In this document: positions 8,793-64,000 of the stretch, in pieces
Layout: the number at the start of each line of letters is the position of its first letter
Position numbering within the stretch: position 1 is the first letter of the stretch
Origin: Basidiobolus meristosporus CBS 931.73
Taxonomy: Eukaryota; Fungi; Basidiobolomycota
Length of the DNA stretch: 64,000 nucleotides
Direction: 5' to 3'
Assembly (NCBI GenBank): GCA_002104905.1
Contig: MCFE01000501.1
Span: 1 to 64,000, forward strand
Program-made: the position numbers and the translations under genes
Notes under the pieces: generated by a model
The model's database searches: none
Seen by the model: only the letters and a program-made list of their open reading frames with translations
What the model was told of the DNA's origin: nothing

Positions 8793-8817
8793 TTTGCTTT
8801 GACCCAAGTTCAAAGCT

Positions 8818-8831
8818 GAGAGGGGGGTGGA
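8818..8831 (+). promoter_or_regulatory. Polypurine tract
   Basis: GAGAGGGGGGTGGA immediately before the 3' LTR. Confidence 0.8.
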
Positions 8832-9896: not shown

Positions 9897-12429
9897 CCGC
9901 TTGACCTACCCTTCCACCAGGTAGGGATTGACTTTGTTGGCCCCTTCACAAAATCAAGGAAAGGAGAAAAATACATAATAATTGCTACTGATTATTCCCC
10001 AAAGTGGATAGAAACCCCAGCCATTCAAAATAAATATCAGAAGACAACCGCACAATTTATTGTAGAACACATCATCTGTTGGCACAGATATCCTCAGATA
10101 CTCCTGTCCAGCAATGGTGGTTCCATCTTGAATGACATCATGGCCCATTTGTGCAAAATGATGGGCATGAAACAGGTCTTCATGGCTGCATATCACCCCC
10201 AGACCAATGGATTAACCAAGAGGATGAGCCAGATGTGTTGCCACATGCTAGAGAAGCTTCACTGGGAACTTCCCCAGTTGTGGGCTGAGCTTCTCCCACT
10301 GACACTTCTAGCAATTTGTACAATACCAAATAAAAAGAAAGGTTTCTCCCTGTACAAAGCTCTTTATGGACAAAGGCCCAAGTGGTGTGAAGAAGCTGGA
10401 ATGACAACAAAAGGTGTCCCCTTGACAACACATCACAACTATGTAGAAAGGCTGATACACCATATTGCCCACCTATACATAAAAGTTTTTGAAAATGTTG
10501 ACAAGCACATTCCCCCTTCACCCAAAAATGAGAAACTAATGGGACAAAAGTGGAAACCAGGCAATAATGTGTAGTACAACTAAACCATTCCAGGCCTCAA
10601 GTTTTACCCACAATTTACACCCTGATGGATTGGCCCTTGCACTGTTATTAGTTTGGACCACAGGCCAAAGTACACCATCACCCTGAACAATAAGACAATC
10701 AGCAATTTAGTGCCAGCCCATCTGAAACCAAAGTGTGGTTAAACAATTATCAGGACAAGGATAGAGGAAGACACGGGATACATATAAAGTTTATTAGAGG
10801 AAATTTTAGTTGATATAGGTACAAATGACATGCATGAGGAGGTTTGCCTAAAAGGGGGAATAAAAGAACACATATGGAAAGCACCAGAGGAAACAGTTCA
10901 CCTGAAACTGGTGATACCCCTCCCACCAGCAAGAACCAAGATGATATCAAACACAAGACCAACCTGCAAGTGTTGAGAGATATGGTATGAGCACTACGTG
11001 CAACAAGAGCCACCTATGAAGAGTTGTTTGCTGGAGCAATCTTGTTGATACAAGACACCATCAGAGAGGGACAAGACAAGTTATCCACACCAATACAAAG
11101 TATGGAGATACTAACCAAAAAGACCTTGTACCACCTGAGAGGAGGTTCCTTGATCATTAAGGAGAAGGACACTGCACTGGTTCCTGTATCCATACTGGAC
11201 ACAGTCAGACAGAAGACGCAAGGAATCAACTGTTGCACCCTCACAAGGCCTTAAGAGCCCCCCTGTTTTGTTGCATACTTGCCATTAATAGGTACCATGG
11301 TTGTTGAGGTATATGCAGACCTGGTTCAAGCCACAAGAGCACCAGAAGTAGAACTCCCATTTGAAGGACTCCTCCAAGAAATTTGCAAACATCTCAAAAG
11401 GCATTTCCAAGAAGGAACTATCCTATAAAAGATACACAAACAGACTAAATACACTGGCCAGTTAACCCATGCAATCCACTGAGCTGCTGTGTTACAACTA
11501 TTACAGTGGTTTACCATAGGACAGCGCAGGAACCAGTACAAGGTCCAACTCTAAGAAGCCAAAGAAGCCACCATGGACTCTGTAGAGACCATGAGGAAAG
11601 TGCAAAAGCGCCTCAATTGTGCCACAATTTCTACAGACAAGCCACAATACATCTTGGAAGAAGCAACAACTTGTTATTGACAATGGGTGACTGCCAGCCA
11701 AGTGTATACCCTCTTCAAAAGGTCCCCCAACATCATATTGAGCACAACAATGGCAAGCCCTAACAACAAATGCAAGATAAAGAAGCAAGACATTATTGCA
11801 TTATTGCATCTCTTCTAGTTCTCCAACCCTCCTGGGGAACCTGCCCAGAACCCTATGGTATGCCAACTGTTTGGCTTTGTGAAAAACATCCCTTGAGCAA
11901 CACAAGCCACACCCCACTCTGCTGTCAAATGGTATCAGGTACTTGCCTGCAACCCCCTCACAAGTGACAATCAGAAATGGTACTATGGTGACTCCCCATG
12001 CTCTGTAAACAAAATCAACCCTGGAGAAGTAAGTTAGTCAAAGAACTTTGAGGACAAAGCTCCCTCTTAACCCCTGGGATATGTGAGTACTAAATGTGTT
12101 ACCCACACTTTGCCCAGGAGTTCTCCCCAGAGTCATACCTGAAGTCCCCCAGTACTGTGCCTATGATTCCCCTATGCATCCTCCCTCCTATTCCTGCCCT
12201 CATCTAGTTAGAACATCTACAATAATAGGAAGATGTTCACACCCCTATCTTATAGCACATTGTCTATGATCTCAGCCCCCCCAAGTGATATATATATATA
12301 TATATCCAATTGAACAAAGTGAGGGAACAAGAAGATTTGGACAGAATAAACACAGGTCTTTATTACCTTGCTACCTTCTATTGGAAGCTATTCTGAACCA
12401 AGTGGTATTGGCTTGACCTACAAGCTCTC

Positions 12430-17908: not shown

Positions 17909-19065
17909 GATGGTAACCAAAGTGGTAAGTATCAGTGTAATCTGTAGTGTGATATGCATTTGTTTCCATTAGCATTAAGAAACCATATCTAAATACCAGA
18001 TTCTACCTACCACAATAATGGTATCTGATTGCACATGTGATGCCAATATTACAAGCTAGCACAGTCATCTGTGCTAACCTCATTGTGTAAGAATGTGCCA
18101 TAGTGTGCAGGATTGTCCCAGATTGTGCAAAATTTTCCAGGAGCAATCCTGCCTCTTGGTAGCTACAATATCATGCCCAATTGTTCTTAACAACCATGGA
18201 TTGGGCTGCATGCCCTGGCACAGTACAATGAAACAAGTCAAATATCCTTATACTACTGAGTAAGTTGTACATGGGGCATTCCAAGCTAAATGAGCCCTTT
18301 GAGATATCAGGGAAGTTTGAAAGAATTGGCAGATTTTACAGAGAATCTGCCCCCAAAGTACTTCTGACTAGCTCCAATCAATATTTTGATACATATGCTA
18401 CAAATCAAGTGCAAGGACTGGATCAGCTGGATATATATTTGCTCCAGTGGCCTTCTGAAGCCATTTCTACCAAGAGTACATTGGAAGCATTAGGAGTCAT
18501 ATGTTGACATTGTAGGAATATTTATCCAGAAGTGGATCACCAATGCCAGCTTGATGCATCTACATCATTTATGCAAAGAGTTTGTGATGGGATTTGAGTG
18601 GCTGTACTACAAACATAAAGCTGATCTTGCAGATCTCTGCTGCTACTGTATCCATTCTCTACTCCATCTTACCTAGTGTGTGGAGAATATTGGGCCTTGC
18701 TTCACATTTTGAAAGTTTCCTATGGAGCAGATGTGTGCGGAGATAGGAAGACAAGTCAAGTTGCAGGTACTACAATGTTACAATTTCATCAAAAATATTA
18801 ACTTCAAGTCTATCATGGATGTGATGAGTTGGCACATGGAGGACAGTGTTATGAATAGACACAAGGCAGGAGAGTAGGACTAGGCAAGGCAGGACCAGGA
18901 AAGGACTTAGGTGTGGATCAACAAGGCAAGGTGGATTTCCAAGGCAAGGCTGTTTATTCAAGGCCTGTGTTTATCAGACTGAGGAGTACATAAGGGGAGA
19001 TAGGCCTATATATACTTTTTGGCAATATGGATGCCAAGAGATATTGGCTAATACTGATGGGGTTT

Positions 19066-22050
19066 CTGATATCCTTACTAGGAATGAAAGGATGACAAGA
19101 CTTGAGGGCTGGGTGGCAAGAATCTCAAAATGTTTCTTGCTCAGCAATGGGTGTTCCATTTGCCAACAGGCATCATCTCCCTCTTCCAGGGCATATTCTT
19201 TTTTTCTGGACAGGGTATCAGGCTTTCCTTGCTTTGCACCAGGTCTATAGGTAATAGTAAAGTCAAAGCTGGACAGGAAGAGTGACCATCTGGCTTGTCT
19301 CCGGTTAAGTACTTTGGGGGTTGCAAGGTACTTGAGGTTCTTATGGTCACAGAAGACTTTGATTTTGTGTTTTGCACCATCCAGGTAGTGTCTCCATTGC
19401 TCAAAGGCTACAATGATGGCAAGCAACTCCTTATCATAGATATCATAGTTGATCTCTGCAGGGGAATACATCTGAGAGTTGAATGCAATGGGGTGCAACA
19501 CATTGTCTTCATTGTACTGGGAGAGTATGGCACCAAGGGCAAAATCAGAAGCATCAGTCTCCACTATGAATTGCTTCTCAAGGTCAGGGTGGGCAAGCAG
19601 GGGGGCCTTCAGGAAAGATTTCTTGAGTTGGCTGAACAAGGTGGATTGCTCCTCATTCCAGGCAAAAGGTGTGTTCTTCTGGGTAAGCTTTGTCAGAGGG
19701 GTGACTATCTTGGAGTAGTTGGCTATGAACCTGCAATAGAAGTTGGCAAATCCCAGGAAGGATTGTACTTCCTTGACTGAGCTTAGAGTTTTCCAGGATT
19801 GGACTGAGTCAACTTTCTTTGGGTCCATTCTTGTTCCCTCAGGGCTGATGAGGTAACCAAGAAACTCCACTTCTCTCTGGTCAAATTCACACCTCTTTAG
19901 CTTGGCATAGAGACTGGCAAAGCCTAGTTTTCTTAATACTTTCTTGACATGTTCATCATGTTCATCTTGGCTCTTAAAGTATATGAGAGTATCATCAAGG
20001 TAGACTGCCACAAACTGGTCAAGGTACTCACAGAATATGTCATTCATGAGGTGTTGAAACACAGCAGGGGCATTGGCGAGGCCAAATGGCATTACTTTGT
20101 ACTCAAAGTGACCATATCTTGTGCAAAAGGCAGTTTTCTATTCATCACCAGGCTTGATTCTGGCAAAATTGTAAGCTCCTCTCAAGTCAATCTTGGTGAA
20201 GTCTTGGGCAGCAGATAGCTGATCCAACAGTGTGTTGATCATGGGCAGGGGTTAGCAGTTCTTGACTGTGATCTTATTCAAAGCACAGTAGTCCACACAC
20301 ATTCTGAGGGTGCCATCCTTCTTCTTGACAAAGAGGATTGGGGCTCCTGCAGGTGATTTGGAGTGCTGAATAAAGCCCTTCTGGAGGTTTTCTTAAATAT
20401 AACCATGGAGTTCTTTCAACTCCGGCTGGGAGAGGTTACATATTGGGCCAAATGGAGGGACTTTTCCATCTTCAAGATCAATAGGGCAGTCATAAGGCTG
20501 ATGATCAGGGAGGAGTTCTGCTTTCTTCTTGTCAAAGATATGGGCAAACTCTTGGTACTTGGCTGGTATATTTGCTGAGGGGGCTCCTTCAGCTGGCAAG
20601 ATATCTTGGGCTATTGAACTGTTGGCAACAGTCTTTTCACGGTTATCAGGGTCTGGACATTTCATGGAGTTGACTTGGTGGGATCTGGTGAATGACAGGA
20701 TCTTGGATTTTCAATCAATACTTGGATTGTGGTAGCTCAGCCATGAGCTTCCAAGCACAATAGGATTGTGTGGTGAGTTGATGATGTTGAATGCAAATCT
20801 TTCTTGGTGAGCAGTACTGGACAGCTGGAGTAAGCATGTTTCATGGGTAATGGCACCAGAGGAGAGTGATCTTCCATCAATAGCTTCTAGTTGGACTGGA
20901 CAGGATTTCAAGGTAACAGGAATGGAGTGCTTCTGGACAAAGGCTTGGTCAATGAAACAGGATGAAGCACCAGAATCAACCTGGACTAGGACTGGGACAG
21001 GACTGGAGTCAGGGATCTGGATCTTGACAGGCATTCTCATGGACTGGATAGATTTTGTGGCAAAGGAAGATTCTTGGATATGCTGGATTTTCATGGGTGG
21101 GTCCAGTTGCAAGCCTGTCAGTGCAACTGGACATTGGAGTTTCCCGACAGATCTGAATCAGGTTGATTACTAGAGGACTGCATCAGCTTGAAGCTGGACT
21201 TCTTGTTGGGGCAGGATTTGGCAATGTGACCTGGTTGGCCACAGTATAGACAGAGGTTAGCTTGTTGACATCTGGACTTTTCACTCTTTGATAGTTTCTT
21301 GTATTTGGCACTATCAATCTGCATGGGATCTTCTGGAGTGACTTGGGGAGCAGGAGGGGCTGGGACTGCAACAGGAATGTGTCTTTGATGGTTCTTTTGC
21401 TTCTTCTGGAATAGTCTGTTATCACACTGGATTGCTTGGTGCATAGCTTCAACCAATGTATCTGGATCTGGGAGTGTGAGTAGCAGATCACAAACTTCAT
21501 CATTGAGGCCATCTTGGAATTGGCTAATCAAGGCTGCATGACCCCAGGAGCTGAGGTCACTGGAGAGTTGTTGGAATTCTGGGGCATAGACTGATGCTGG
21601 CTTGTTTCCTTGTTTGAGGGTCTTGATCTTGTTGGCAGCAGTTCTGGCTTGGTCAAGGTTACCAGATGTTAGCTCCATATCAGTGAGGAAGGCTTGGTAG
21701 TCTCTGAGTAGGGGAGAGTTGGTCTCCACTAATGGGGCAAACCACTTGAGAGCTGTACCAGTAAACAGGTTGGAGATGAAGCCAACTTTGGCCTAGTCAG
21801 TGGGGTACCGGTTGGGCTGGAGTGCAAGATTGTTCTTCACCATGTTTATTAAGCCAGGGAATTCATTCTGAGAGCCATAGAACTTGGTAGCAGGTGTATA
21901 CTTGGGTTCTTAGTTGACTGGGACATGGCTAGTTTGCTGGACACTTTGGTTCTAGAACTGAGCAAGAGTGTTTCTGAGGTCTGCATGGTCTTGCTGCAGT
22001 TGGGTAAAGGCAGCCATTAGCTGGGCAAAGTTCAGCTCTAGGTTGGACAT
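19066..22050 (-). pseudogene. gag-pol of Tf1-like element (gag, protease, RT, RNaseH)
   Basis: ATG at 22050; ORF pieces 21118-21729 (CLYCGQPGHIAKSC), 20711-21112 (VDSGASSCF), 20393-20665 and 18974-20092 (YLDD, ETDASDFA). Confidence 0.9.
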
Positions 22051-29430: not shown

Positions 29431-30807
29431 TGTGTGGGGAACGTGGGCATGGTGGTGGTGAGTTTAAATAGCTTTAAGCCTCGCATGGGGGCCATCTTTG
29501 GAATAGGCATGTTTACACGGTGGGACAGCTCGAATTCACGCCACAGGAATCCGGTGGACGTGTGAAAGTAACATATGCAGGTTGCTTGTCTTACCCCGAG
29601 GGCGAGTGGAGATTACCTACTGAAGTGGGCATCAAGAGGACGACGGATAAGTGGTGAGGATTGGATCTGAGCGAGGCCATTTCGGGAAATGATGAGATTG
29701 AGCAACGTAGGGCCGTGGAATCGAGCCGATTTTGGAAGCTTCCTTGACCGTGACGTGCGGGAAATTCCAGGTCATCCGGGCATGTCCATCAGTACCAAAG
29801 AATTATTCGGGAAATGATCGACCCTCCGTGACCGAAAATCCCGTTCCCCGGTCCCACGGCCCATCACAGCTGCCAGGGAAATGGATGCTCGGTGGTGGGA
29901 CGGTACAGATTTGGTATTTCTCTACCTTTCCTTCTCCCGTTTCTGAAATGTCGCTGCTGCCTCGCTTCGCACGTAGATCCTAGTCGCTGCAAAAGGATTT
30001 CAGGAAGATCATTCAATATCCGGAATTAAGAGGGGATCAATCTGGAGCCTGTATGTGAAGTGGGCGGGTGTTGCGGCGTCCACCACTTGATGGTGGAACT
30101 GTAGGTGTAGATATTGCTTTGTACACACCAGCAGGCCCATCCATGCTTTTCGGTTAACCCGTCTACACACAGCCGCCTCTTGCTGCGCGAGACGTACTGA
30201 AACAACCCCATCTCATGAGCCTGTAAGAACCAGATTGGTTGTTTGAGAGTGGCCCTCTTGCCAATGGGCAACCCTGGCGGAGATTCATGTTGAGTGCGGC
30301 AACTAAACATTGGAAATGCAGGGTCGCATATTAGCTCCGGTATGAGAGGTGCCATGACCAGCCCGACAAGGCATACAACCGCACTGATGGTCCATTGCCT
30401 CCAAAGATCGAGGTGCACTTTGCGAAAGATGCAGTCAGATGGATAGACTTGATTCTAGAGTATGCAAGCGGTTCCCTTACATTCGGCAAACCCAACCCGG
30501 ATCAACTTTAGTGGTTCGTCATCTGATGCCATATAGCGAGCTACTCACTATGAAACGTCTCCGTCAGATGTGTAGGGACTCTGTACGCCCTGTTCATTCG
30601 CGTGTTCCGATAGGGCTTAGACTCGGCTACTCTTATGCAGTGCGGTTTGAATGAACGATCCCTACTCAAGATCTCAGCTACCTTCGCATCAATTGATGTG
30701 TCGGTTGGGTGACTTTGAACCGAAACAATACCAGAGGGAGCAGAGAATCCCGCTATATAAGGATCGTAGGATGTTCCACTAAAATCACCACCGTAGAGGC
30801 ATCCGCC

Positions 30808-31764
30808 ATGCACAAGTTTGCTCCTCCCGCCATCTTAGCACTCTCGGTATTATGTGGGTCACTCAGTGCGTATGATTTGCCCCAAGTGTGCTACCGCCAG
30901 GGCGACCCTGGGATGTGCAAGGCAGCTATTCCTAGATGGCACTACAATCCAGCCACCGAAAAGTGTGAGGAGTTCACCTATGGTGGCTGTGGTGGGTACG
31001 TTCCATTTAAGAGCCTGGAGAAATGTCAAACTACGTGCAAGGTGGAATGGGAGCCTGAGCTAGGACCCGAGCCCAAACATGACAAGCCCAAGGTCTGTTA
31101 TCGCAAAGGAGAAACTGGGCCATGTAGAGCAGCGATGCCAGCATGGCAGTTCAACATGAAGACCGGAAAATGTGAAAAGTTTACCTATGGTGGATGTGAT
31201 GGCTTTGTCCCCTTCAGGTCGGTGAGCGATTGTCAAAAGACGTGTGCAGGTGAGGAGTCCAAGCCAGAACCTATGCCGGAACCTGAGCCAGAGCCCAAGC
31301 ATGACAAGCCCAAGGTCTGCTATCGCAAAGGAGAAACTGGGCCATGTAGAGCAGCAATCCCAGCATGGCAGTTCAACATGAAGACCGGAAAATGTGAAAA
31401 GTTCACCTATGGTGGATGTGATGGCTTTGTCCCCTTCAGGTCGGTGAGCGATTGTCAAAAGACGTGTGCAGGTGAGGAGTCCAAGCCAGAACCTATGCCG
31501 GAACCTGAGCCAGAGCCCAAGCATGACAAGCCCAAGGTCTGCTATCGCAAAGGAGAAACTGGGCCATGCAGGGCAGCAATGCCGGCTTGGCAGTTCAACA
31601 TGAAGACCGGAAAATGTGAAAAGTTCACCTATGGTGGATGCAAAGGCTTTGTTCCCTTCAGATCGGTAAATGATTGCCAAAAGACGTGTGGAGATGAAGA
31701 TCCCGTCCCTGTGCCTGTACCAGTACCCGTGCCGGAGCCTGAACCCGAATACGAATCCTATTAG
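30808..31764 (+). CDS. Secreted four-domain Kunitz/BPTI serine protease inhibitor
   Basis: Signal peptide, four 6-Cys domains with FTYGGC, P1 K/R/R/R, Pro/Glu linkers; domains 2-4 lie on 222-bp tandem repeats; no introns. Confidence 0.92.
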   Translation: MHKFAPPAILALSVLCGSLSAYDLPQVCYRQGDPGMCKAAIPRWHYNPATEKCEEFTYGGCGGYVPFKSLEKCQTTCKVEWEPELGPEPKHDKPKVCYRKGETGPCRAAMPAWQFNMKTGKCEKFTYGGCDGFVPFRSVSDCQKTCAGEESKPEPMPEPEPEPKHDKPKVCYRKGETGPCRAAIPAWQFNMKTGKCEKFTYGGCDGFVPFRSVSDCQKTCAGEESKPEPMPEPEPEPKHDKPKVCYRKGETGPCRAAMPAWQFNMKTGKCEKFTYGGCKGFVPFRSVNDCQKTCGDEDPVPVPVPVPVPEPEPEYESY

Positions 31765-34700: not shown

Positions 34701-35133
34701 ATGGGTGCACTCACCCAGGAACTGCCTCAACCCTAACCCTAGCCACATCAGTAACTTCAATTAGCCACAATACTCTATGATACTAAAAATGGTTAGGCTT
34801 CAGTCACCCAACACTGACAAGGGATTCATTCAACATCCCCCCCCCACTTTGAGAGGTTTTGATCTGACTATCTCGTCTTCTATTTCCATTGGTTTGTCTC
34901 ACATAATCATCCACTCAATAGCCCTTAAACCCATTCACCTAATTCGTTCTTTCGTACAACCCTTACCTGCTCTTGGCCAACACATTTCGTATATTAAGCT
35001 GCTCTCAGCCTACATTCTACCACCCATTTCAGCAAAAACGATTCTCTTTCGGATTAATATCGTTTACACCTCCTTTGGGCATCCTCACATCCACCTTGTC
35101 TCTGCTATAGCTCTCTGCTTGTACTCTCTAATA

Positions 35134-35637
35134 ATGGTCATGTGTGTCAGTGCCCATCCTCCTTCACCCACCCCCGTTGATACCACTTACTCGCTTCCCG
35201 AAGCTGCCGAGGCTGACCGTGAGCCTGGCAGAGGATTGCGCGTGCTAGTGGTTGATGACAACCGCATATATCTCAGTATTGTCACTCGAATGCTTGAGAA
35301 GTATTTCACCAACATAGTGACTTACACTTTCGCGACCACCTCCGCACTTTGCGCACTCGAATCGTTATCCCTTTACAATTACGACCTGATCCTTCTTGAC
35401 ATCGACATGCCAGTGCTGACTGGTATCGAGGCGACACAAGAGATTAGAAATCCGTACAGTCGATTCCAGGTTCTGGATGCGAACAGGAGGATCCCCATTA
35501 TCGCCATCACCACCAACGACCTAGAGGAGCACCGCAAACGCTATACCGAGGTGGGGATGAATGCGTGTGTGGGCAAACCAGTGACACTGGATGAGCTACG
35601 ATTGGCCCTCAGCACAGTCATGGGATCAGCCATGTAG
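35134..35637 (+). CDS. Stand-alone response regulator receiver protein
   Basis: VLVVDDN, LILLDIDMP (phospho-Asp), IIAITT and VGKP motifs are all present. I took the start at the ATG near 35134 rather than the longer low-complexity ORF start at 34777. Confidence 0.85.
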   Translation: MVMCVSAHPPSPTPVDTTYSLPEAAEADREPGRGLRVLVVDDNRIYLSIVTRMLEKYFTNIVTYTFATTSALCALESLSLYNYDLILLDIDMPVLTGIEATQEIRNPYSRFQVLDANRRIPIIAITTNDLEEHRKRYTEVGMNACVGKPVTLDELRLALSTVMGSAM

Positions 35638-36104: not shown

Positions 36105-38440
36105 CTATTGGTCCTTGGGCAAGCCGCACATCTCACAACTGGAGAGATTAGATGGGTTCACAAATGTACAATGTCGACACGCCCAGGTGGCTTGTGTTGC
36201 CGAGGAGCCGCCGCCGCTACTGGAGCCGTGTCCCGTGTGACTACCCCCAAATCCGCCCAGCCCCTGGGAGTGGTCGGCTTCCCTCAGAATGGCGAGCAGT
36301 GTCTGCCATCCGGAGGAGGCTTCGAGCTTCCTCGCTGCGTCATCGGTATGGGTAGTGGCCGCTTCGCAAAGAAAGCCCATGTCCCCAGAGTCGAGGACGT
36401 TCATCTGCTGGACAAACGCCATCAGGTGGAAATCGGAGATCCCGTGAACATTTTGGCTGGAGGGGAGGTATTTCTTGAGGGTGTAGATCTCCTGCACCTC
36501 GAGCCCCGACCGGTTCTCGATGGGAAAGTGGGTGGGGGAGGTGAAGAGAGGGTTCGGCTGGGATGGGAAACCGTGGGTAACATTCACCAGCAGATACTCC
36601 ACAGGGAAACTGGGTTTGGCGTTGTGACTCACCGTGACACCGTATTCATTCTTATACTTGTAGAACACCTCGGGGATGTATCGGGTGGAGGTAGCCTCCT
36701 TCACTCGCATGATCGATGGCTTGATAGATGCTTCGATGATATCCGCGTCCACCATGGCCACACATGAGTTGGAGACTTGGTATGAGGAGACATCGATGTC
36801 ACCCGTTTCGTTTCCTGACACGACACAGGTGACAAACTTACTGCCAAACTGTCCGGAAGCGCACCATTTGGAGGGGCTGGGGTGGTTCGCCTGCATGGCA
36901 GCTGCGAACGTGATTTCAAGGGAGGAGAGGAAGAAGGAGTCGATGTGCCTTTTGCAAACTACCTTTCCTTGACCTGTCCCGTCATCCATGAGATCCGTAA
37001 AGATCATTCCTACCTTGAGGCTGGAGGTTAATGTCCATTCGGAAGGAGAAAAAACGAACTCTTTATATACCTTCACTAGGCCGCATCTGGAGGCCAACTC
37101 ATCGATGGACTTCTCTTCACTCCATGGAAGCAAAAGTGTCAAGCCGTCCGGCTCGTTTGTCTGAGGTGGTTCATAAATGGCCTCAACCACGGCTTTGATA
37201 CCTAGAGGCACTTCGTTGTAAGGCTCATAGCGACCATAAAGGTAACCGAACCTCTGACAACCGGTGGAACGCCAGTAATTTATGAAGTTATCAATCAAGC
37301 TGGCGGATGAAAACTCCACATGATCAACCATTCGGAATGCCTGCCAGCAGGAGTGAAGCAGGGGAGGGGGGATTGAAATGGTTAAATACGGTCCATAAAC
37401 CAGATTTGCTATTCACTCCGTTACCTGTCTTTGCAGTGTAATGGCACTGGGCTGGCATTTGGTGCAAATGCTCTCCGGCCACGGTGGGTGACCACCCTTG
37501 CAATTCCTGTTCACCCGGTAATTAGGCTCTTCCAGTGGGGGTAGATACGACGATTTCGCGCCGCTCTTTTTGTTCTGTACGTTTAGCTGACGAAGATAGG
37601 CATGGAACGACATATGTTTAATCTTATTCTCATCCAAATACTTCGCATCGAATGGCTGGGGGTCATTCGGTTAGATCCGTTAGGGCGTATGGTCTGTGCG
37701 TACCGCATAATTGACTTACCTCAAGTGGCATGCAATAGTCACACATTCCGTTGTAGGCGTGCTTACAGCTAGACAGAAAACCGCCAAGGTTAGCATTGGG
37801 TAGAGGCTTATGCTCTGCGATGAGGAAAAGATACCGACAAGTTAGGGTCCCTTCCTCTTTTTATAAGCCCGTCCTGTTTATCCAGATGGTCGTCGATCTC
37901 GTCTTGCTTGACCGTCTTGAAGGAGGCGGTGGCTTCCTTCACCTCGGGCTGTTGTTCGTCGGCGGGTTTGGAGATTTGTGCGTACAACATATCCCCATGT
38001 CTTTTTGAAATTGGATGCTTGGTGAGCGAGCAGTTTAGGGCGACTTGTGAGTTAGACATGGCGATATCTTACTTCAGGCCTAGCTGCTCGACGGTCGCAC
38101 CACTTGTGGCAAGCGCGGTGGCACAGTCAGGTCGAACAGATAAAACGATACTGCTTGGGTCGCGCTTTAATATCTCGGCAAGCTACCGTGGCAATGATTG
38201 GATGTGAGTGACCGTCCAAAGGAAACCAGGTTCGTCTATGGGCTCCAACCGAGGGACATGACGTATCCATACAAGCGTGGATTCATACCTTTTGAATGGC
38301 GAACGATATGTCTTCAGAACCATCGACCTGCACTCTACTTGTCCCTTCGGACGACCGGATACGAAGAAGCTGTCATAAAAGAAAGGGGTTTAGGTTGGTC
38401 CAAGAGAAACATCCGCCGCGTCTATGATAAATAATACCAT
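36105..38440 (-). CDS. NPL4: Nuclear protein localization protein 4 (Cdc48/p97-Ufd1 cofactor), multi-exon
   Basis: ATG micro-exon at 38440, then LLRIRSSEG; zf-NPL4 ([23 protein letters not shown]); MPN-like [10 protein letters not shown]; C-terminal RanBP2 zinc finger [10 protein letters not shown]. Confidence 0.95.
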
Positions 38441-54166: not shown

Positions 54167-55381
54167 CTGCTGTTGTTATGTAAATCTATTGTAAATATGC
54201 CGTATCTTTTCGTTAGCATCTTACTCAAAAGGACTTAAAGCAAGCACTTCTATCAAGCGGGAGGTTGTGTTTATAGCGGGTATGGCTTCCATGGTGCATT
54301 TGAGTTAAGAGAAAGTGTTAACCTGAGGACTGTTCCTTTTTCAAGACCCGGTGATGCGGTTGGATGTTTGTCACGGATACCAGCCAGCCTAAGAGGTGCA
54401 TTTATACCTTCTTTGCTTTGGGGTTCTTGTTCCTTTTCTACAGAAAGCATAGAAGTATCCGAGTCTAGATATGCCGGGTACATAATCTCATGTTTGCTCC
54501 TTGAATTACCAGATACATTATATCCCATTGTCCACGCAGAATGGGGAAACATCCATGATACTAAAGCCAAACCCGGAACTTTGCTATGAAATCCCTAGAG
54601 CTAGAATTCCATAACATAAGGATATATTTGGATCATGTAACAAGTTTTTCTGGTTTATATGATGATGGTAACTACGCTGGCCTGTCCACACCGATTACTT
54701 CCTCACCCAAAACCTCTCTTTGTGGCCTACCTTTCCGATAGTGGTAGTTCGGGCCTTGGTATGAAAAATGCAAATAGAGTCATAGTAATAAGACTTCATG
54801 TCACTGTAAGCAGACATAACAGCTGCTATGTATTCCACTGGTGCTCGCTCAGGCAATTCGAACACTAGGCTAGCATCAACGCATTGAAAGCTACGTCTTA
54901 GGTTTGATATACATCGCAGAGACTGTTTTGGTATAGAGTGCTTACTCACAAGGAAATGAGGCCGAAGAAGACTTTGTTTCTCTATACTCGTATATGTTGA
55001 CAGAGAGTGATCGGTCTTGATTTAGGGTTAGGGACCATTTGCATTAGGTGAATTGTTTGCCGCTTCGAGGTTTGAGATATTGCGAGGGCCACATCAGAGG
55101 TTGTTTTGGTGGTCGTAATTCCTGGTTTCTTGTAGTTTACCCTTGAACTTTTCGCTGCTGGCGAGTGACAATTTAGAGTTGTGGATGAAACGAAAATCGT
55201 GTATTGCGAACTCACATGGCTTGTAATAAATCCATGGGATTGAAATTGGTTTGATTTAGTATATGGACTGCTATACATAATAAAAGTCTAGTGATGAAGC
55301 TTATATTAGGGAACGTAATTTTACAGAGATAGGGCCAAGTTATCTAATGAGATGTTTTCAAGAAACGAGTTGATCATGCAT

Positions 55382-58102: not shown

Positions 58103-58602
58103 AGTTGTAAAAATTTGGAGTTCCACCTAAATATTCACATAAATTAGTCACTTAGATCAATACCAACATATCTTAGAGAATACTGACCAAATTCCTTGTT
58201 GGGATTTACTTAGAATATTTTCACCAAAATACCAGGTACCCAGAATATGAAAATTAGATATGTTGTCCAAGCAGCCCCAAACTTTGCACACATGTTCTTG
58301 GGACCTTCCCAAACCTATTCTACATGTTTGTCATGCCTTGATCATGTAAAAGTATAAATACTACTCTTACATTCAGTAAATCATTAAGTAAAAGCCGCAT
58401 AATCTACTTGTTCACCCAATCACTTCCTATATCTCCAAGACTCTTACAGCAGGTTATGAGCCCTGAGCTGTCACTCCCTGCAATGTCTACTACTGCTATT
58501 ACTGGAATTTTTCCCTCTGCTGAAAAGTTGAATGGATCTAACTAACAAGTGTGGAAAGTAGTGATGAAGATGTGGCTACAAGAAAGAGGCCTTTGGGATA
58601 TT
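58103..58602 (+). mobile_element. Copia 5' end (LTR, PBS, gag start) broken off at the telomeric array
   Basis: LTR 58103-58451 (family of 24809-25156), PBS GGTTATGAGCCCT at 58452-58464, gag ATG 58483 ...VWKVVMKMWLQERGLWDI, then TTAGGG. Confidence 0.85.
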
Positions 58603-59352
58603 AGGGCTAGGGGGAGACAGTCACCAACAGGGGAAATCTTTATTTCTGCTGAAACAAAGAAGCCAGTGCTATTGTTGTGGCATTGATCCAAGAGTGTGTA
58701 GCTGAGGGGAATTTGTAGGTAAGTTAATCAAGAGAAATGATGGTTCTTCAGTACTCAAGACACTGTTCAGCAGGAAGGGGGTAGCAAGTGGGATAAGGAT
58801 GATTTGTGAGCAACATTGATCATGGGAGTATGATAGGGATTGATATTCATAATGAAGGGAGTGTGTTGTTTCAGATATTGCTGCCAAAGGTCTGTCAAGT
58901 GCTCAGGCAGGCCAGCTTGGGTTTTTCTGACTGCAGAATATAATGAGCAAACTTCTTGACATCAGGATCTCCAAGTATTGTTCTCCAGCAGGAGCCAGGT
59001 GTAGTGTGGTGTGTTCTCATCCAGGCCTTGAGCAGTGGGTTGTTGCAGTGGTGAAGTCTGTGATATATTCCGGTTCTATGGTAGAGAAGTCTGATTTTAT
59101 AGGGCATAAAGCCAAAAGCACCAAGAATTGCATGTCTGTAGTGGCATTCAGGCAGATGAGGCACCAAGGAGGTAATACACCAGACTGCAAACTTGTCAAG
59201 CTTAGTGCAGTCTCTAGAAGTTAGTGAGAGAAGTGGTAAGCCAAATTCCAGGACAGGGAAGACAAACTGCTTGAGTAGAAGGAGACAGCTGGGAGCTGAA
59301 GTTGTAGGAGGAGAAACAGCCAGTAGTTTGTGGAGTGCCTGTCTTGCCAGGA
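58601..59352 (-). mobile_element. Unit 1: 5'-truncated LINE (type A, diverged copy)
   Basis: Homologous to 60030-~60785; encodes the ORF2 C-terminal region (ORF 58895-59377). Confidence 0.85.
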
Positions 59353-59974
59353 GGTTAGGGGGGATGAAAATCACCAAAGGGTGAAATCTTTATTAAATAA
59401 TAAATAAAGAAGCCAAGTTTGAATATGGGAATCTGGAATGAAGAAGGCCTATAAGATAAACTTGGACTTTGCTGTTTCCCAAATATCCTCAATATCAAAG
59501 TCTAGAGAAGAATGTAGCAAAACTGCTTATTCACTGCAATACTTCTTGAGGAAGTTTGTGACTTGAAGTGAAGGAGAGTTTTTCAATAAGCTGGTAAATC
59601 TTTTGAGGAGTTCTTTTTCAAGAGAGAATGGTACAAAGAGTGGAATGTCCAAATGATGTCTAAATATATGCTCTGAGAGCTCCCAATCCAGCATATTTTT
59701 GACTTCTTCTGTAAAATCTTCAACAATATCCTTATCAAGAATAACTTGCAGGAGATCCCTGGCAATGTACTGAATGTTATTTATCTTAGGCATATGAATA
59801 CCTAGGTCCTTGAGGTAGTTTCTCTGTTCTGATATTGGGAGATAGCCTGCATTTCTGAAATTGCAAACAGCCCAATTGGCAGTGGGAGGAGTATCAGGGC
59901 TGACAGGGAGTCTGCTTCTGGCTCTAGAGTGCACTGGCTTAGGAGACTGTCTTGATGGAAGGGCAGCTTGTTTT
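59353..59974 (-). mobile_element. Unit 2: 5'-truncated unit (type B) encoding a putative ORF1/gag-like protein only
   Basis: The frame is open from the junction to the stop at 59527, followed by its own 170-nt 3' UTR and the shared 3' module; no RT sequence. The ORF1 assignment rests on remembered resemblance to mucoralean LINE ORF1. Confidence 0.55.
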
Positions 59975-60029
59975 GGGTTAGGGGAGGGAAAGTTACCAAG
60001 GTAGGTGAAATCTTTATTTGATTTCAGAC
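59975..60029 (-). mobile_element. Unit 3: 55-bp stub (type D) consisting almost only of the 3' module
   Basis: GGGTTAGGGG-AGGGAAAG-TTACCAAGGTAGGTGAAATCTTTATT, then the next TTAGGG. Confidence 0.7.
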
Positions 60030-62837
60030 TTAGGGTTAGGGGGGGAGACAGTCACCAACAGGTGAAATCTTTATTTCAGTTGAAACAAAGAAGCCAGCGC
60101 TACTGTTGTAGCTTTGATACAAGAGTGTGTAGCTGAGGGGAATTTGTAGGTAAGTTAATAAGAAGTGATGATAGTTCTTCAGTGCTCAGGACACTGTTCA
60201 GTGGGAAGGGGGGTAGCAAGAGAGGTAAGAATGACTTGTGAACAACATTAATGAGGGGAATGTGATAAGGATTGATATTCATCATAAAGGGAGTGTGCTG
60301 CTGCAGATATTGCTGCCAAAGGTCTGTCAAGTACTTCAGGTAGGCCAGCTTGGGTTTTTCTGACTGCAGAATATAGTGAGCAAACTTCTTGACTTCAGGA
60401 TCTCCAAGTATAGTTCTCCAGCAGGAGTCAGGTGTAGTGTGGTGTGTTCTCTTCCAGGCCTTAATCAGTGGGTTGTTGCAGTTGTGAAGTCTGAGGTATA
60501 ATCTGGTTCTAAGGTAGAGAAGTCTGATCTTTTAAGGCATAAACCCAAAAGCACCAAGAATAGCATGTCTGTAGGGGCATTCAGGCAAATGAGGCACCAA
60601 GGAGGTAATGCACCATACTGCAAACTTGTCAAGCTTAGTGCAGTCTCTAGAAGTAAGAGAGAGAAGTGGTAAGCCAAATTCCAGGACAGGGAAGACAAAC
60701 TGCTTGAGTAGAAGGAGGCAGCTGGGAGCTGAAGTTGTAGGAGGAGTAACAGCCAGTAGCTTGTGGAGTGCCTGTCTTGCCAGGATAATTCTCTTCCTCA
60801 GGTGTGCTCCAGAGTCTAGTCCAGTAGGAAGGAAAGGAAAGCCATGATATGTAGCAGAAACCTGAGCAGGTAGAGTGGAGTTCTCCAAGTTGATGGGAGA
60901 GCCCAAAGGTACTGTCTTTGCAATGGAAAGCTGGAGATTATTCTTCTGCAGATACTGGTGGATGGTCTGGGAGTCATGTTGCACATTGGAGGAGGATATT
61001 CTGATGTCATCAGCAAAGAGAGTAACCAGGCAGTCAGCTGAGAATCTTGGGAAATCATTCAGGAAGATGGCAAACAGTATAGGACCAAGCACAGAGCCTT
61101 GAACTACTCCATTAGGAACTGAGAACACAGCTGATTGCTCACTTGGGTGCAGAATTCTTGCTTGTGGATCCAGAAACAGAGATCTGACAAGGAGGGTAAG
61201 AGAGGTACTGGAGAAGCATTGCAACTTGGACCAAAGCAGATTTCTGTCAACTGAATCAAAGGCCTTAGTAATATCAAACAGAACAGAGGGATACTTGCAC
61301 TGGAGAGAGTGATCTTGGCTAAGTATGACTGCATATTCCAAGGAGAGGCCAGGAACAAAGCCAAACTGTGCAGGATGAAACTTGAGGGAGTCAGAGTAGA
61401 GCTCCTGAGCAAGCAGAAGCTCAAACACCTTTCTGCAGGTGGGCAGCAGAGATATTGGCCTGTAGGAGCTAGGATCCAGGTGCTTTCCTTTACCCTTGTA
61501 CAGTGGCAGAACATTTGCAAAGGACCATTCCTCAGGAGTAGAAAGCTGGGCTGAGCATTGCTGAAACAGTGGAAGCAGAAGTGCAGACATGGCCTTGGTA
61601 CTAGTCTTCAGAAGCTCATAGGAGATTGTGTCCACACCTGGAGCAGTAGAGTTGGGAAGCCTCTTGAGCACATTATGGATTCTCCTTTGATCAAGTGCAA
61701 GTGGGATGGGCAGAGTCTTCAAGTCAGGATGAAAGCCAGGAGTTGAATACTGCTTTGTAGAGAAGAAGATGTTAGCCAGCTGTTCTGTTGAAGGTAACTT
61801 CCTGGAAGAGGGCCTCATTGCCCTGTAGAGTCTTGATACTGTTCTTGTTATAGAGTTGGAAGATTGCAGAGGCAAAGAACTCATAATATGATCCCAGAGC
61901 TGAGTATGCAGAGTGTGGTGAATTGCCTTGGAGTGGTGTATTGCTGTCAGGAGGAGTTTCTCTGTTTTTGGGTTAGGGAAACTCAGGTAGCTTTGTTGCA
62001 GGGCTGAAACAATGGATTCCCATTTTCTTGAGGTAACAGCAGTAGTCTTGCATGGCAGTGAGAGGGAGGCAGACACCAGAATCAGATGCTTCACAAAGAG
62101 CCAGGCATAGTTGAGATCATCTGGCAGAGAAAGTAGCAAACTGGCAAGCTTCAAGTAGTTCCCAAAGTCTTTCTTCTGATTCTTGGTAGCTTTGTGGGTG
62201 AGCACAGTAAGTTTTGGCAGATTCTTCTTCACAACTGGTTGCATAGAAAGGGACCAGGCTGGGTGGTCAGAGGCTCTCAAGGATCCTAGCTCAGCTCCAG
62301 AGAATTGCTTGACTTCATTCACAAAGTAGAGGGTAGCAGCAGAAGGGCAGATCCAGTCAACACATCTTTTCTCAGATTGAGCACCTAGTGCTAGCAGATG
62401 GCTTTCTCTCAGGAAGTTCAGTAGGAATGTAGCTCTTGGCTTCATTCTTGCAGTCAGAGTAGTCTTGTTCTCAGGATGGGGAATGTTGAGATCTCCAAGC
62501 AAGATAATAGGTGTTGATATAGATTGCTGGTATTTCTGGACTTTCTGGCATATAACTTGCCTTCCTGAAGGGCAAGACTTGGAGGCAGATAGCAGAGCAC
62601 CAGACTGATAGTTGGCAACTGGAGAGCAGCACAGTAAGGGGAGTAAAGAGGAACACAGAGCTGAGGAGTATTGATGGTAGAAGAGATGAAGCAGATAGAG
62701 GAGGTATTCTTTGTTCTAGGAGTAGAAAAGCAATATAGATTAGTCAAAAGTATAGAGTGTAGCTGGACATCAATCAAACACAGGAGGGAAAATCTTGAAA
62801 GAAGTCTCTCTAGAGTTGGTCTTGATGGCTGTATGCT
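60030..62837 (-). mobile_element. Unit 4: near-complete LINE ORF2 unit (type A: APE endonuclease + RT)
   Basis: EN motifs YLPP, LGDLN, VD and SDH; RT motifs APGVD, YRPISLL, FDITKAFD, GVVQGSVLGP and FADD. The frame extends to 60100, with a nonsense codon at 60532 and a frameshift near 62550; the 5' end is cut inside the EN N-terminus. Confidence 0.92.
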
Positions 62838-63362
62838 GTTAGGGGGAGGAAAGTCACCAAGTGGTGAAATCTTTATTTACTTATGACAAGTATCTAAAGA
62901 AGCCAAGTTAATCTGAAGTAATTCCTAGAAAGCTAGGTCTGAGAGATATCTTCCTGGTAAGCCAGGTCTGAGAGTTGAGAATCTGAGTGGTACTATATTT
63001 CCTAGTTAGCTAGGTCTGAGAGTGGTTTCCTGGAAAGCCAGGCCTGAGAAGTGAGAATCTGAATATATCTGAGCTAAGTTATACTGGTTTGCGGTAGCTG
63101 AATTGTGGCCGGAATGGCCAGTAGACTGGGGGAACTGAGATGTATTTCTGGGCGATCACTGGCCAAATTTACTAGGCAAATCTGGCCATTAGCATTTCAA
63201 GGATTTCAGCCAATCAGAGCCTTTACTTTGCCCGATGGTTGATCAAGCCATCTCCCAATGAGCACACATCAATTTATTAATCAAATTTTGCTGGATCCAG
63301 GATTTGAACCCACAACCCTGGGTATGGAAGGGTTAGGGATAACCACAAGGCTAAGTGTTCTT
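62838..63362 (-). mobile_element. Unit 5: full-length tRNA-Gly-derived SINE-like element (type C), ~520 bp
   Basis: Head 63360-63289 has A box, CTTCCAT anticodon loop and B box GGTTCAAATC at tRNA spacing; repetitive hairpin body; tail shared with the LINE. Confidence 0.75.
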
Positions 63363-63630
63363 GGTTAGGGTTAGGGTTAGGGGGAGGAAAGTCACCAAGT
63401 GGTGAAATCTTTATTTACTTATGACAAGTATCTAAAGAAGCCAAGTTAATCTGAAGTTATTCCTAGAAAGCTAGGTCTGAGAGATATCTTCCTGGTAAGC
63501 CAGGTCTGAGAGTTGAGAAGCTGAGTGGTACTATATTTCCTAGTTAGCTAGGTCTGGGAGAGGTTTCCTGGAAAGCCAGGCCTGAGAAGTGAGAATCTGA
63601 ATATATCTGAGCTAAGTTATACTGGTTTGC
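63363..63630 (-). mobile_element. Unit 6: 5'-truncated type C SINE
   Basis: Near-identical to 62838-~63093; preceded by (TTAGGG)3. Confidence 0.85.
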
Positions 63631-64000
63631 GGTTAGGGGGGGAGACAGTCACCAACAGGTGAAATCTTTATTTTAGTTGAAACAAAGAAGCCAGCGCTAC
63701 TGTTGTAGCTTTGATACAAGAGTGTGTAGCTGAGGGGAATTTGTAGGTAAGTTAATAAGAAGTGATGATAGTTCTTCAGTGCTCAAGACACTGTTCAGTG
63801 GGAAGGGGGGTAGCAAGAGAGGTAAGAATGACTTGTGAACAACATTAATGAGGGGAATGTGATAAGGATTGATATTCATCATAAAGGGAGTGTGCTGCTG
63901 CAGATATTGCTGCCAAAGGTCTGTCAAGTACTTCAGGTAGGCCAGCTTGGGTTTTTCTGACTGCAGAATATAGTGAGCAAACTTCTTGACTTCAGGATCT
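63631..64000 (-). mobile_element. Unit 7: type A LINE 3' end, continues beyond the window
   Basis: Near-identical to 60034-~60410 (two differences noticed). Confidence 0.9.

What the first reader, a model, noticed from the sequence alone, without database searches (positions are those of the whole stretch)
58601..64000. Candidate multipartite telomere-extending retroelement system (LINE + ORF1-only unit + SINE + stub)
Seen: seven units in one orientation, variably 5'-truncated. Each is joined to the previous unit's 5' end by only 1-3 TTAGGG repeats (one degenerate, CTAGGG). The G-rich strand is plus, so the chromosome end would lie to the right, and every unit's 3' end points inward. Four unrelated bodies share one 3' module. 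The innermost LINE copy is the most diverged, while outer copies are near-identical. Known: this polarity is what results when a telomeric 3'-OH primes reverse transcription on an RNA ending in CCCUAA, as for Drosophila HeT-A/TART/TAHRE, Giardia GilM/GilT and endonuclease-less Athena/Coprina Penelope-like elements. Magnaporthe MoTeRs and Bombyx TRAS/SART instead insert into telomere tracts. Inference: a division-of-labour consortium that builds chromosome ends alongside telomerase. I know of no description of an APE-LINE with ORF1-only and tRNA-SINE partners at fungal telomeres, but I cannot search the literature.
Basis: partly seen in the sequence, partly recalled or inferred. Interest (0 to 1): 0.92.

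Follow-up and report, generated by a model that had tools for sequence, protein, structure and literature searches.

The report
Retroelement stack capping a fungal chromosome end
The last 7 kb of this fungal chromosome is a one-way stack of jumping genes (a LINE, two families that keep only its first gene, and a short passenger) that all end in the telomere repeat instead of poly(A), so they seem to be copied onto worn or broken chromosome tips alongside telomerase.

Summary
The contig ends 1.9 kb beyond the window in about 195 nt of (TTAGGG)n. Nine 5'-truncated units (seven in the window) lie head-to-tail with their 3' ends inward, joined by 1-3 TTAGGG.

The families are:
- an APE+RT LINE;
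- two ORF1-only families (the "stub" is a fragment of the second);
- a 520-nt SINE.

All share a 3' module of two RNA helices with covariation, followed by a C-run and CCCUAA.

Of 30 sampled genomic copies, 28 lie within 9.1 kb of the contig end they face (KS p = 4e-17). None occurs in the window's inner 58.6 kb. The array caps a Copia-type gag cut in mid-gene. Junction tracts hold 1-5 repeats, and about a tenth lack a full TTAGGG. Terminal tracts reach 220 nt or more. No unit is split by another. The LINE copies get younger outward (8.2, 0.8, 0.4, 0.0 % divergence).

Best reading: a G-strand 3'-OH primes reverse transcription on CCCUAA-tailed RNAs at ends that have lost nearly all their repeats. 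A TRAS/SART-like endonuclease nick remains a serious rival, because the APE catalytic residues are conserved.

The fungal telomere elements described so far (MoTeR, FoTeR, Cnl1) use a different endonuclease. I rate this a new variant of a known kind. The scan had already flagged the same system on other contigs of this genome.

The parts
58486..58600 (+). Inner boundary: N-terminus of a degenerate Copia-type gag, cut after '...ERGLWDI' by the first telomere repeat. The rest of the Copia element is absent distally.
   Evidence: Translation. The paralogue in L011 continues past the cut and matches Retrotran_gag_2 at 1.5e-17.
58601..58612 (+). Innermost junction tract, TTAGGGCTAGGG.
58613..59353 (-). 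U1: oldest LINE-A copy. It is the 3' terminal 741 nt, 8.2 % diverged from the majority sequence.
59361..59977 (-). U2: 5'-truncated unit of ORF1-only family B. Its ORF (59527-59934) covers the conserved C-terminal domain of LINE ORF1, followed by the shared 3' module.
   Evidence: (E = 1e-13 against LINE ORF1).
59984..60029 (-). U3: 46-nt stub of ORF1-only family C. The full element in L021 is about 1.15 kb, with 5' tandem repeats, one ORF1-like ORF and the module.
60042..62838 (-). U4: LINE-A, 2797 nt, 5'-truncated inside the APE domain. The RT ORF is 60532-62502. The APE late motifs GDLN and SDH are present, and the region upstream of 62502 is frameshifted.
   Evidence: (RVT_1 at 1.6e-24).
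60042..60099 (-). One instance of the shared 3' module: a 10-bp helix that includes the AAUAAA, a 5-bp hairpin UCACC/GGUGA, and a C-run, followed by CCCUAA.
62845..63364 (-). U5: full-length SINE of 520 nt. The B-box GGTTCAAATCC is at 63300-63310 and an A-box-like motif at 63343-63353. The 5' end ...CTTGG recurs in many arrays.
63383..63633 (-). U6: SINE 3' part, 251 nt, preceded by (TTAGGG)3.
63639..64000 (-). U7: young LINE-A copy, 1977 nt in all, running to contig position 65615. Beyond the window come a 68-nt LINE stub (65621-65688), a 14-nt SINE-type stub, and about 195 nt of terminal (TTAGGG)n ending at 65913.

Best explanation
This is a telomere-specialised family of non-LTR retroelements. 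It comprises an autonomous LINE (ORF1, a stop codon, then ORF2 with APE endonuclease and RT), two ORF1-only derivatives and a Pol III-type SINE.

The RNAs share a structured 3' module that ends in a C-run plus 1-5 CCCUAA. Inferred steps:
1. ORF2p recognises the module, as in a stringent LINE/SINE partnership.
2. The CCCUAA tail pairs with a G-strand 3' end.
3. Reverse transcription runs outward and creates a new chromosome tip. The copy is usually 5'-truncated.
4. Telomerase then caps the new tip.

The general picture is G-strand-primed addition at chromosome ends, with each new unit distal to the previous ones. I hold this at about 0.85.

For the source of the primer I favour, at about 0.55, an exposed end that has lost almost all of its telomere tract (0-5 repeats left, or a break inside the previous unit or inside subtelomeric DNA). 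On this view the elements heal ends that are too short for normal capping. The alternative is a nick made by the element's own APE.

Shown here: the anatomy, the polarity, the terminal location, the shared structured tail, the short junction tracts, the capped truncations, and the age order in this array. Inferred: RNA 3' ends, recognition by ORF2p, the nature of the primer, the role of telomerase, and any benefit to the host.
For: - Terminal (TTAGGG)n follows directly after the outermost stubs. Seven of the ten other loci that reach a contig end also finish in (TTAGGG)n.
- 28 of 30 sampled copies lie within 9.1 kb (median 2.5 kb) of the contig end that their 5' end faces. KS p = 4e-17; 20 of 22 contigs of at least 50 kb are in the terminal 10 %.
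- No copy occurs in the window's inner 58.6 kb at DNA or protein level.
- Over 84 junctions the tracts hold 1, 2, 3, 4 or 5 repeats in 51, 20, 7, 4 and 2 cases. The count of 1 includes a few junctions with no repeat. Terminal tracts reach 220 nt or more.
- About a tenth of junctions have no full repeat and only microhomology, for example L027, L024, L023, L025 and the L003 stubs.
- The base before the tract is G in 48 of 84 junctions. The last repeat is in fixed phase with the module, TTA plus G-run, in 70 of 83.
- No unit is split by another in about 100 units.
- The array caps a Copia gag cut in mid-ORF, and the rest of that element is missing.
- Near-identical subtelomeres end 66-520 nt apart, each capped by a unit.
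- The age gradient in this array is 8.2, 0.8, 0.4, 0.0 %.
- The shared module forms two helices: 96.9 % of cells pair against 42-57 % in slid controls, and covariation exceeds all 500 shuffles.
- The same tail and the same stacking occur in relatives from other samples.
Against: - All APE catalytic positions (N, Y, D-x-N, D, S-D-H) are invariant across two LINE lineages about 50 % diverged, and the domain is intact in every relative. The one change is a conserved Glu-to-Asp. This suggests the nuclease is used.
- Many full-length SINE 5' ends are followed by only 1-3 repeats. Under an erosion model this requires that additions happen before any erosion of the previous unit.
- SART1Bm shows that an endonuclease-driven telomere specialist can cut at a fixed short distance into a repeat tract (PMC7265360).
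- Two sampled copies do not fit the terminal rule: C613 at 97 kb of 218 kb, and C781 facing inward. I could not inspect them.
- The age gradient outside this contig is confounded by how the loci were sampled.
- No RNA data were available.
Confidence: 0.6

Rival explanations
1. TRAS/SART-like site-specific retrotransposition. The element's APE nicks the G-strand within TTAGGG repeats, preferentially in the first few repeats at the base of the terminal tract. Ordinary TPRT follows, and the distal telomere fragment is rejoined to the new copy's 5' end.
For: - The APE catalytic residues are conserved and the domain is intact in all relatives.
- Almost every junction contains TTAGGG in fixed phase.
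- SART1Bm needs at least 3 repeats and inserts in the third (PMC7265360).
- Insertion at the base of the terminal tract would also give an outward age order, unsplit units and 5' truncations.
Against: - Insertion at random positions in a tract of about 30 repeats would leave long proximal tracts. The maximum seen is 5 repeats in 84 junctions, so an unexplained preference for the base of the tract is needed.
- About a tenth of junctions have no TTAGGG target at all.
- Unique DNA is often followed by a single repeat and then a unit. This requires two steps: healing by telomerase and then a nick in the first repeat.
Confidence: 0.33
2. The arrays are built mainly by secondary processes: RT template-switching from one RNA to the CCCUAA tail of the next within a single event, read-through co-mobilisation of neighbouring units, and subtelomeric recombination or duplication. 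On this view unit order says little about successive end additions.
For: - The composite 'full-length SINE + TTAGGG + LINE-A' recurs beside different flanks in L012, L013, L014, L015 and L023.
- L003 holds a tandemly duplicated block of a SINE plus a 39-nt stub.
- Exact SINE 5' ends are followed by very short tracts.
- Subtelomeres are paralogous between ends.
Against: - U1 is 8.2 % diverged while the outer units of the same array are at most 0.8 % diverged, so the array was not made in one event.
- Paralogous ends carry different units and different truncation points.
- These processes still need an initial priming event at a chromosome end, so they complement the main explanations and do not replace them.
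Confidence: 0.07

Closest known systems
Drosophila HeT-A / TART / TAHRE telomeric retrotransposons
   Same: Head-to-tail arrays at the very chromosome end, with 5' ends pointing outward and variable 5' truncation. A Gag/ORF1-only element coexists with RT-encoding partners. An APE domain is retained in the RT-encoding members (the last point is from my own knowledge).
   Different: Here a (TTAGGG)n cap coexists with the elements and every unit ends in the telomere repeat, not oligo(A). A SINE partner exists. The host is an early-diverging fungus. Clade membership was not established.
Bombyx TRAS / SART (R1-clade, APE, telomere-repeat-specific)
   Same: An APE-type LINE associated with a telomerase-type repeat. 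TRAS has the same polarity relative to the C-strand (my own knowledge). The profile of the APE domain matches TRAS1 EN at 1.8e-10.
   Different: TRAS and SART carry poly(A) and insert into telomere tracts; SART1Bm needs at least 3 repeats (PMC7265360). Here there is no poly(A), the tail is CCCUAA, proximal tracts hold 1-5 repeats or less than one full repeat, and there are SINE and ORF1-only partners.
Fungal MoTeR, FoTeR and Cnl1
   Same: Fungal non-LTR elements in subtelomeric or telomeric arrays. The 3' end abuts C-strand telomere repeats and truncated copies predominate (PMC12857005; 10.1101/2021.08.11.455996).
   Different: Those belong to the CRE/SLACS-like clade with a C-terminal REL endonuclease (PMC12857005). 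This LINE has an N-terminal APE domain, a separate ORF1, and non-autonomous partners.
Athena / Coprina Penelope-like elements
   Same: The 3' ends carry reverse-complement telomere repeats, the elements sit at chromosome ends, and priming by the telomeric 3'-OH has been proposed (PMC10088271 cites Gladyshev and Arkhipova 2007).
   Different: Those have a PLE-type RT and lack an endonuclease. Here there is a LINE-type RVT_1 RT with an APE domain.
Stringent LINE/SINE pairs with a shared structured 3' tail ending in short repeats (eel UnaL2/UnaSINE1; my own knowledge)
   Same: The LINE and its non-autonomous partners share a conserved 3' stem-loop followed by a short terminal repeat.
   Different: Here the terminal repeat is the host's telomere repeat and the elements are confined to chromosome ends.

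Membership tests
APE-type non-LTR retrotransposon (LINE) | Reverse transcriptase domain of LINE type | tested here: met
   RVT_1 at 1.6e-24 in the window's U4 ORF. Full-length relatives score 3.7e-27.
APE-type non-LTR retrotransposon (LINE) | N-terminal APE/EEP endonuclease with catalytic residues | tested here: met
   Exo_endo_phos at 7e-5. The profile hits L1 EN at 1e-18. Y, G-D-x-N, D and S-D-H are invariant, and the metal-binding Glu is Asp. In the window's own copy only the C-terminal half survives, and it is frameshifted.
APE-type non-LTR retrotransposon (LINE) | Poly(A) or A-rich 3' end | tested here: not met
   All 3' ends are a C-run plus CCCTAA repeats.
TRAS/SART-type telomere-repeat-specific LINE | Insertion inside telomere tracts, with substantial repeats on both sides | tested here: not met
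   The proximal side holds 1-5 repeats, or less than one full repeat, in 84 junctions.
TRAS/SART-type telomere-repeat-specific LINE | Endonuclease that cleaves the telomere repeat specifically | not testable with these tools
   This needs a biochemical nicking assay.
TRAS/SART-type telomere-repeat-specific LINE | R1-clade RT | not tested
   No named reference set was available. The nearest outside hits are Jockey-like APE+RT proteins of arthropods.
HeT-A/TART/TAHRE-type end-extending consortium | Head-to-tail terminal arrays, 5' ends outward, variably 5'-truncated | tested here: met
HeT-A/TART/TAHRE-type end-extending consortium | Gag-only element dependent on an RT-encoding partner | tested here: met
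   Families B and C encode only an ORF1-like protein. Dependence on the LINE is inferred from the shared tail.
HeT-A/TART/TAHRE-type end-extending consortium | Replaces telomerase repeats entirely | tested here: not met
   Long terminal (TTAGGG)n tracts cap the arrays.
MoTeR/FoTeR/Cnl1 (CRE-like fungal telomeric elements) | C-terminal restriction-enzyme-like (REL) endonuclease | tested here: not met
   ORF2 has an N-terminal APE domain, and Pfam finds only RVT_1 and Exo_endo_phos. The REL motif as defined in PMC12857005 was not searched for explicitly.
tRNA-derived SINE | Head homologous to a tRNA | tested here: not met
   ARAGORN finds none. Rfam gives no tRNA match at E up to 10.
tRNA-derived SINE | Internal Pol III A and B boxes at tRNA-gene spacing | tested here: inconclusive
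   The only exact B-box in 64 kb is at RNA position +55. An A-box-like motif with 1 mismatch is at +12. Neither is significant on its own.
SINE (LINE-dependent non-autonomous element) | 3' tail shared with a partner LINE, non-coding, fixed 5' end | tested here: met
   The module is shared. The same 5' end ...CTTGG occurs in more than 10 arrays.

The most novel reading that the evidence does not exclude
A fungus that has telomerase-type telomeres also runs a Drosophila-like retroelement end-healing system. A LINE, HeT-A-like ORF1-only partners and the first SINE dedicated to telomeres, all carrying a templated telomere-repeat tail, are reverse-transcribed without endonuclease cleavage onto ends that have dropped below the capping threshold or have broken. 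The system would serve as a regular back-up to telomerase and would be a living intermediate between telomerase-based and retrotransposon-based telomeres.
Probability: 0.35. Interest if true: 0.88.

Novelty: new variant of a known kind. Interest (0 to 1): 0.74.

Why it matters
Telomere-specialised retrotransposons are the main natural evidence for the kinship between telomerase and retroelements. The known cases are few and each lacks something. Drosophila has no telomerase repeats. Bombyx elements carry poly(A). The fungal elements use a REL nuclease and have no partners.

This system combines, in one culturable fungus, a telomerase-type cap, an APE-LINE whose RNA ends in the telomere repeat, two Gag-only derivatives and a SINE. 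They share a small structured tail that should be easy to test. That makes several questions directly testable:
- whether a LINE RT can use a natural chromosome end as primer;
- what the APE domain is for in such elements;
- how parasites of a telomeric LINE evolve.

It also warns annotators that stacks of fragments get modelled as genes. P0006, the NCBI model K493DRAFT_348252, is such a chimera.

Tried and rejected
As a result I have no full census, no look at the two internal exceptions, no full-length LINE-A from this genome and no TERT search.
- RNA evidence: no RNA run was listed, so read laying could not be used.
- The metagenome scan for the module core gave 3 hits. All are chance matches in GC-rich contigs without a C-run or telomere repeat.
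- A single-sequence PDB search with the APE region found nothing. Only the profile search worked.
- Foldseek on the ORF1 domain gave nothing significant. The wide search gave RRM folds at middling Z.
- DNA for P0007 was not retrievable and P0006 is not on record.
- I considered that the TTAGGG doublets at 55022 and 34731 mark older units. No family similarity was found there.
- I considered an assembly artefact and rejected it. The same architecture occurs on at least 8 contigs that end in telomere tracts, and also in independent assemblies from other samples.
Full report
**Observation**

The shared motif GTGAAATCTTTATT occurs seven times in the window. All seven lie on the + strand between 58631 and 63672, against 0.78 expected by chance. 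Each one lies about 25 nt to the right of a short TTAGGG tract.

BLAST segmentation gives these units:
- U1: LINE, 58613-59353
- U2: 59361-59977
- U3: 46-nt stub, 59984-60029
- U4: LINE, 60042-62838
- U5: SINE, 62845-63364
- U6: SINE, 63383-63633
- U7: LINE, from 63639 onward

The window is positions 1-64000 of a 65913-nt contig. The remaining 1.9 kb holds the rest of U7, a 68-nt LINE stub, a 14-nt SINE-type stub, and then about 195 nt of (TTAGGG)n running to the contig end. The predicted chromosome end therefore exists. The G-strand is the + strand, and every unit has its 3' end inward.

**Location in the genome**

A search with the SINE plus LINE 3' end gave at least 79 matches from 955 first-look candidates. 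For the 30 best loci the contig lengths are known.
- 28 copies lie within 9.1 kb (median 2.5 kb) of the contig end that their 5' end faces.
- The KS test against a uniform distribution gives p = 4e-17.
- 20 of 22 contigs of at least 50 kb have the copy in the terminal 10 %.
- Of the ten loci that reach a contig end, seven finish in (TTAGGG)n and three break off inside an element.
- The inner 58.6 kb of this window has no copy of any family at DNA or protein level, although it carries other retrotransposons.

Two loci do not fit: C613 at 97 kb of 218 kb, and C781 facing inward.

Earlier notes from this scan describe the same system on other contigs and name the organism *Basidiobolus meristosporus*. 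One independent pointer to the species: an NCBI protein of *B. meristosporus* CBS 931.73 (P0006) contains stretches closely similar to the window's LINE C-terminus.

**The parts**

LINE-A:
- It has an RVT_1 domain (1.6e-24). Upstream of it lie the late APE motifs GDLN and SDH.
- Relatives of 50-85 % identity on ENA and Logan contigs show the full plan: ORF1 of 434-500 aa, then ORF2 with Exo_endo_phos plus RVT_1.
- A profile of the N-terminal region hits L1 endonuclease at 1e-18 and TRAS1 endonuclease at 1.8e-10.
- The catalytic positions Y, G-D-x-N, D and S-D-H are invariant. The usual metal-binding Glu is a conserved Asp.
- ORF2 follows ORF1 in the same frame after a single stop codon, and the APE domain is intact in all relatives.

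ORF1-only families:
- The U2 ORF matches the C-terminal domain of LINE ORF1 (E = 1e-13).
- The window's 'stub' belongs to a second family, C. Elsewhere this family is about 1.15 kb long, with about 100-nt 5' tandem repeats, a single ORF1-like ORF (E = 2e-11 against LINE ORF1) and the shared module.
- There are therefore two ORF1-only families.
- The conserved ORF1 domain models with confidence (pLDDT 80). Residues 17-90 resemble RRM domains at middling Z values (8.3 for Prp24, and many RRMs at 6-7). This gives coiled coil plus an RRM-like domain plus a helical tail.

SINE:
- It is 520 nt long with a fixed 5' end that recurs in more than ten arrays.
- It holds the only exact B-box in the window at RNA position +55 and an A-box-like motif at +12.
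- Neither ARAGORN nor Rfam recognises a tRNA.

Second LINE family: LINE-2 (P0005, 50 % identical to LINE-A) ends in the family-C type of tail.

**The shared tail**

I aligned thirteen modules from five families of this genome and from relatives in other samples.
- They share a 10-bp helix whose 3' strand contains an invariant AAUAAA, a 5-bp hairpin UCACC/GGUGA, a pyrimidine run ending in CCCC, and then CCCUAA.
- 96.9 % of cells pair, against 42-57 % when the partners are slid.
- Covariation exceeds all 500 shuffles. One pair shows five pair types, and there are CG-to-AU and UA-to-AU compensatory changes.
- The AAUAAA lies 28-32 nt upstream of the end of the C-run. That distance would place mRNA 3' cleavage near the start of the CCCUAA tail. 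This last step is inference.

**Mechanism**

Seven facts bear on it.
1. Junction tracts are short. Over 84 junctions the counts are 1, 2, 3, 4 and 5 repeats in 51, 20, 7, 4 and 2 cases, while terminal tracts reach 220 nt or more. Insertion at random positions in a full-length tract is therefore excluded.
2. About a tenth of junctions have no complete repeat and only microhomology. One example is a stub ending in ...ACTTA joined straight to the next unit's G-run. The base before the tract is G in 57 % of junctions.
3. The last repeat is in fixed phase with the module in 70 of 83 junctions. This is expected if the RNA itself ends in CCCC-CCCUAA.
4. No unit is interrupted by another.
5. The array caps a Copia-type gag cut after '...LWDI'. 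A paralogue continues as Retrotran_gag_2 (1.5e-17), and the rest of the Copia element is absent between the cut and the telomere.
6. Near-identical subtelomeres stop 66-520 nt apart, each capped by a unit: L012/L022, L023/L025 and C815/L016.
7. In this array the LINE copies are 8.2, 0.8, 0.4 and 0.0 % diverged from inner to outer. In the other loci only the inner side can be seen, so I do not generalise this gradient.

Together these facts favour priming from a G-strand 3'-OH at ends that retain at most a few repeats, or none. On this reading the junction repeats are copied from the RNA tail and are not left over from the telomere.

The main rival is a TRAS/SART-like nick by the conserved APE near the base of the terminal tract. 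It explains the outward age order and the unsplit units equally well. It is also helped by the SART1Bm precedent of cutting in the third of three repeats (PMC7265360). It does, however, need an unexplained preference for the base of the tract, and it does not explain the junctions that lack a full repeat.

Template switching, read-through co-mobilisation and subtelomeric recombination also contribute. The evidence is the recurrent SINE-LINE composite and the L003 duplication.

**Comparison with the literature**

- No paper in the searchable library links *Basidiobolus* to telomeric retroelements or to telomerase.
- LINE arrays at fungal telomeres are known. Cnl1 sits at nearly all *Cryptococcus* chromosome ends (10.1101/2021.08.11.455996), and MoTeR and FoTeR are further cases. 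All three fall in the REL-endonuclease CRE-like clade (PMC12857005).
- A review of telomeric retrotransposons lists SART/TRAS, GilM/GilT, Zepp, MoTeR1, Tx1-1_ACar and Athena, and mentions no SINE (PMC10088271).
- An APE-LINE with a telomere-repeat tail, two ORF1-only families and a SINE is therefore, as far as I could search, a new variant of the known kind 'telomere-specialised non-LTR retrotransposon'. It is not a new category.

Noticed in passing
L032 2112-2120; L033 2669-2680; L034 2198-2210; L038 1449-1465; L040 905-915: In all related LINEs, ORF1 and ORF2 are in the same frame and separated by a single stop codon (...SA*L...LLLNCNS). Several lack an AUG at the start of ORF2. This suggests stop-codon readthrough or termination-reinitiation.
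   Followed up: partly
P0006 (NCBI K493DRAFT_348252, B. meristosporus CBS 931.73): This annotated 'hypothetical protein' is a chimera of one LINE-2 fragment and two LINE-A fragments. A stack of truncated units was modelled as one gene.
   Followed up: partly
L021 1140-1500: Family C has about 3.5 tandem copies of a roughly 100-nt repeat at its 5' end, each containing a telomere-like GGGTTAGG. This may be a promoter array like those of other telomeric or L1-type elements.
   Followed up: no
G000 C613:96111-99480 (L016) and C781:57421-60790 (L014): These are two arrays that are not at the contig end they face. One is 97 kb inside a 218-kb contig. They could be interstitial arrays, old fused ends or misjoins.
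   Followed up: no
L003 357-1745: A block made of a full SINE plus a 39-nt SINE stub is tandemly duplicated. Local duplication therefore also shapes the arrays.
   Followed up: no
table: 26 of the near-end copies are at the right end of their contig on the + strand, and only 3 at the left end on the - strand. This asymmetry is probably a product of assembly or of hit ranking.
   Followed up: no
window 55022-55033 (+) and 34731-34742 (-): These are isolated telomere-repeat doublets with no recognisable element tail beside them. They may be chance matches or very old relics.
   Followed up: partly
window 30709-31764 (+); 36105-37331 (-); 34777-35637 (+); 5019-10574 (+); 18974-20092 (-): The subtelomeric neighbourhood holds an ORF with four Kunitz/BPTI domains, an NPL4 homologue, a response-regulator receiver domain protein, and LTR-retrotransposon pol fragments (RT, RNase H, integrase).
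   Followed up: no
L040 3827-3852: The Logan contig ends in Illumina adapter sequence (AGATCGGAAGAGC...), so its 3' end is an assembly artefact and cuts the LINE-2 tail short.
   Followed up: no
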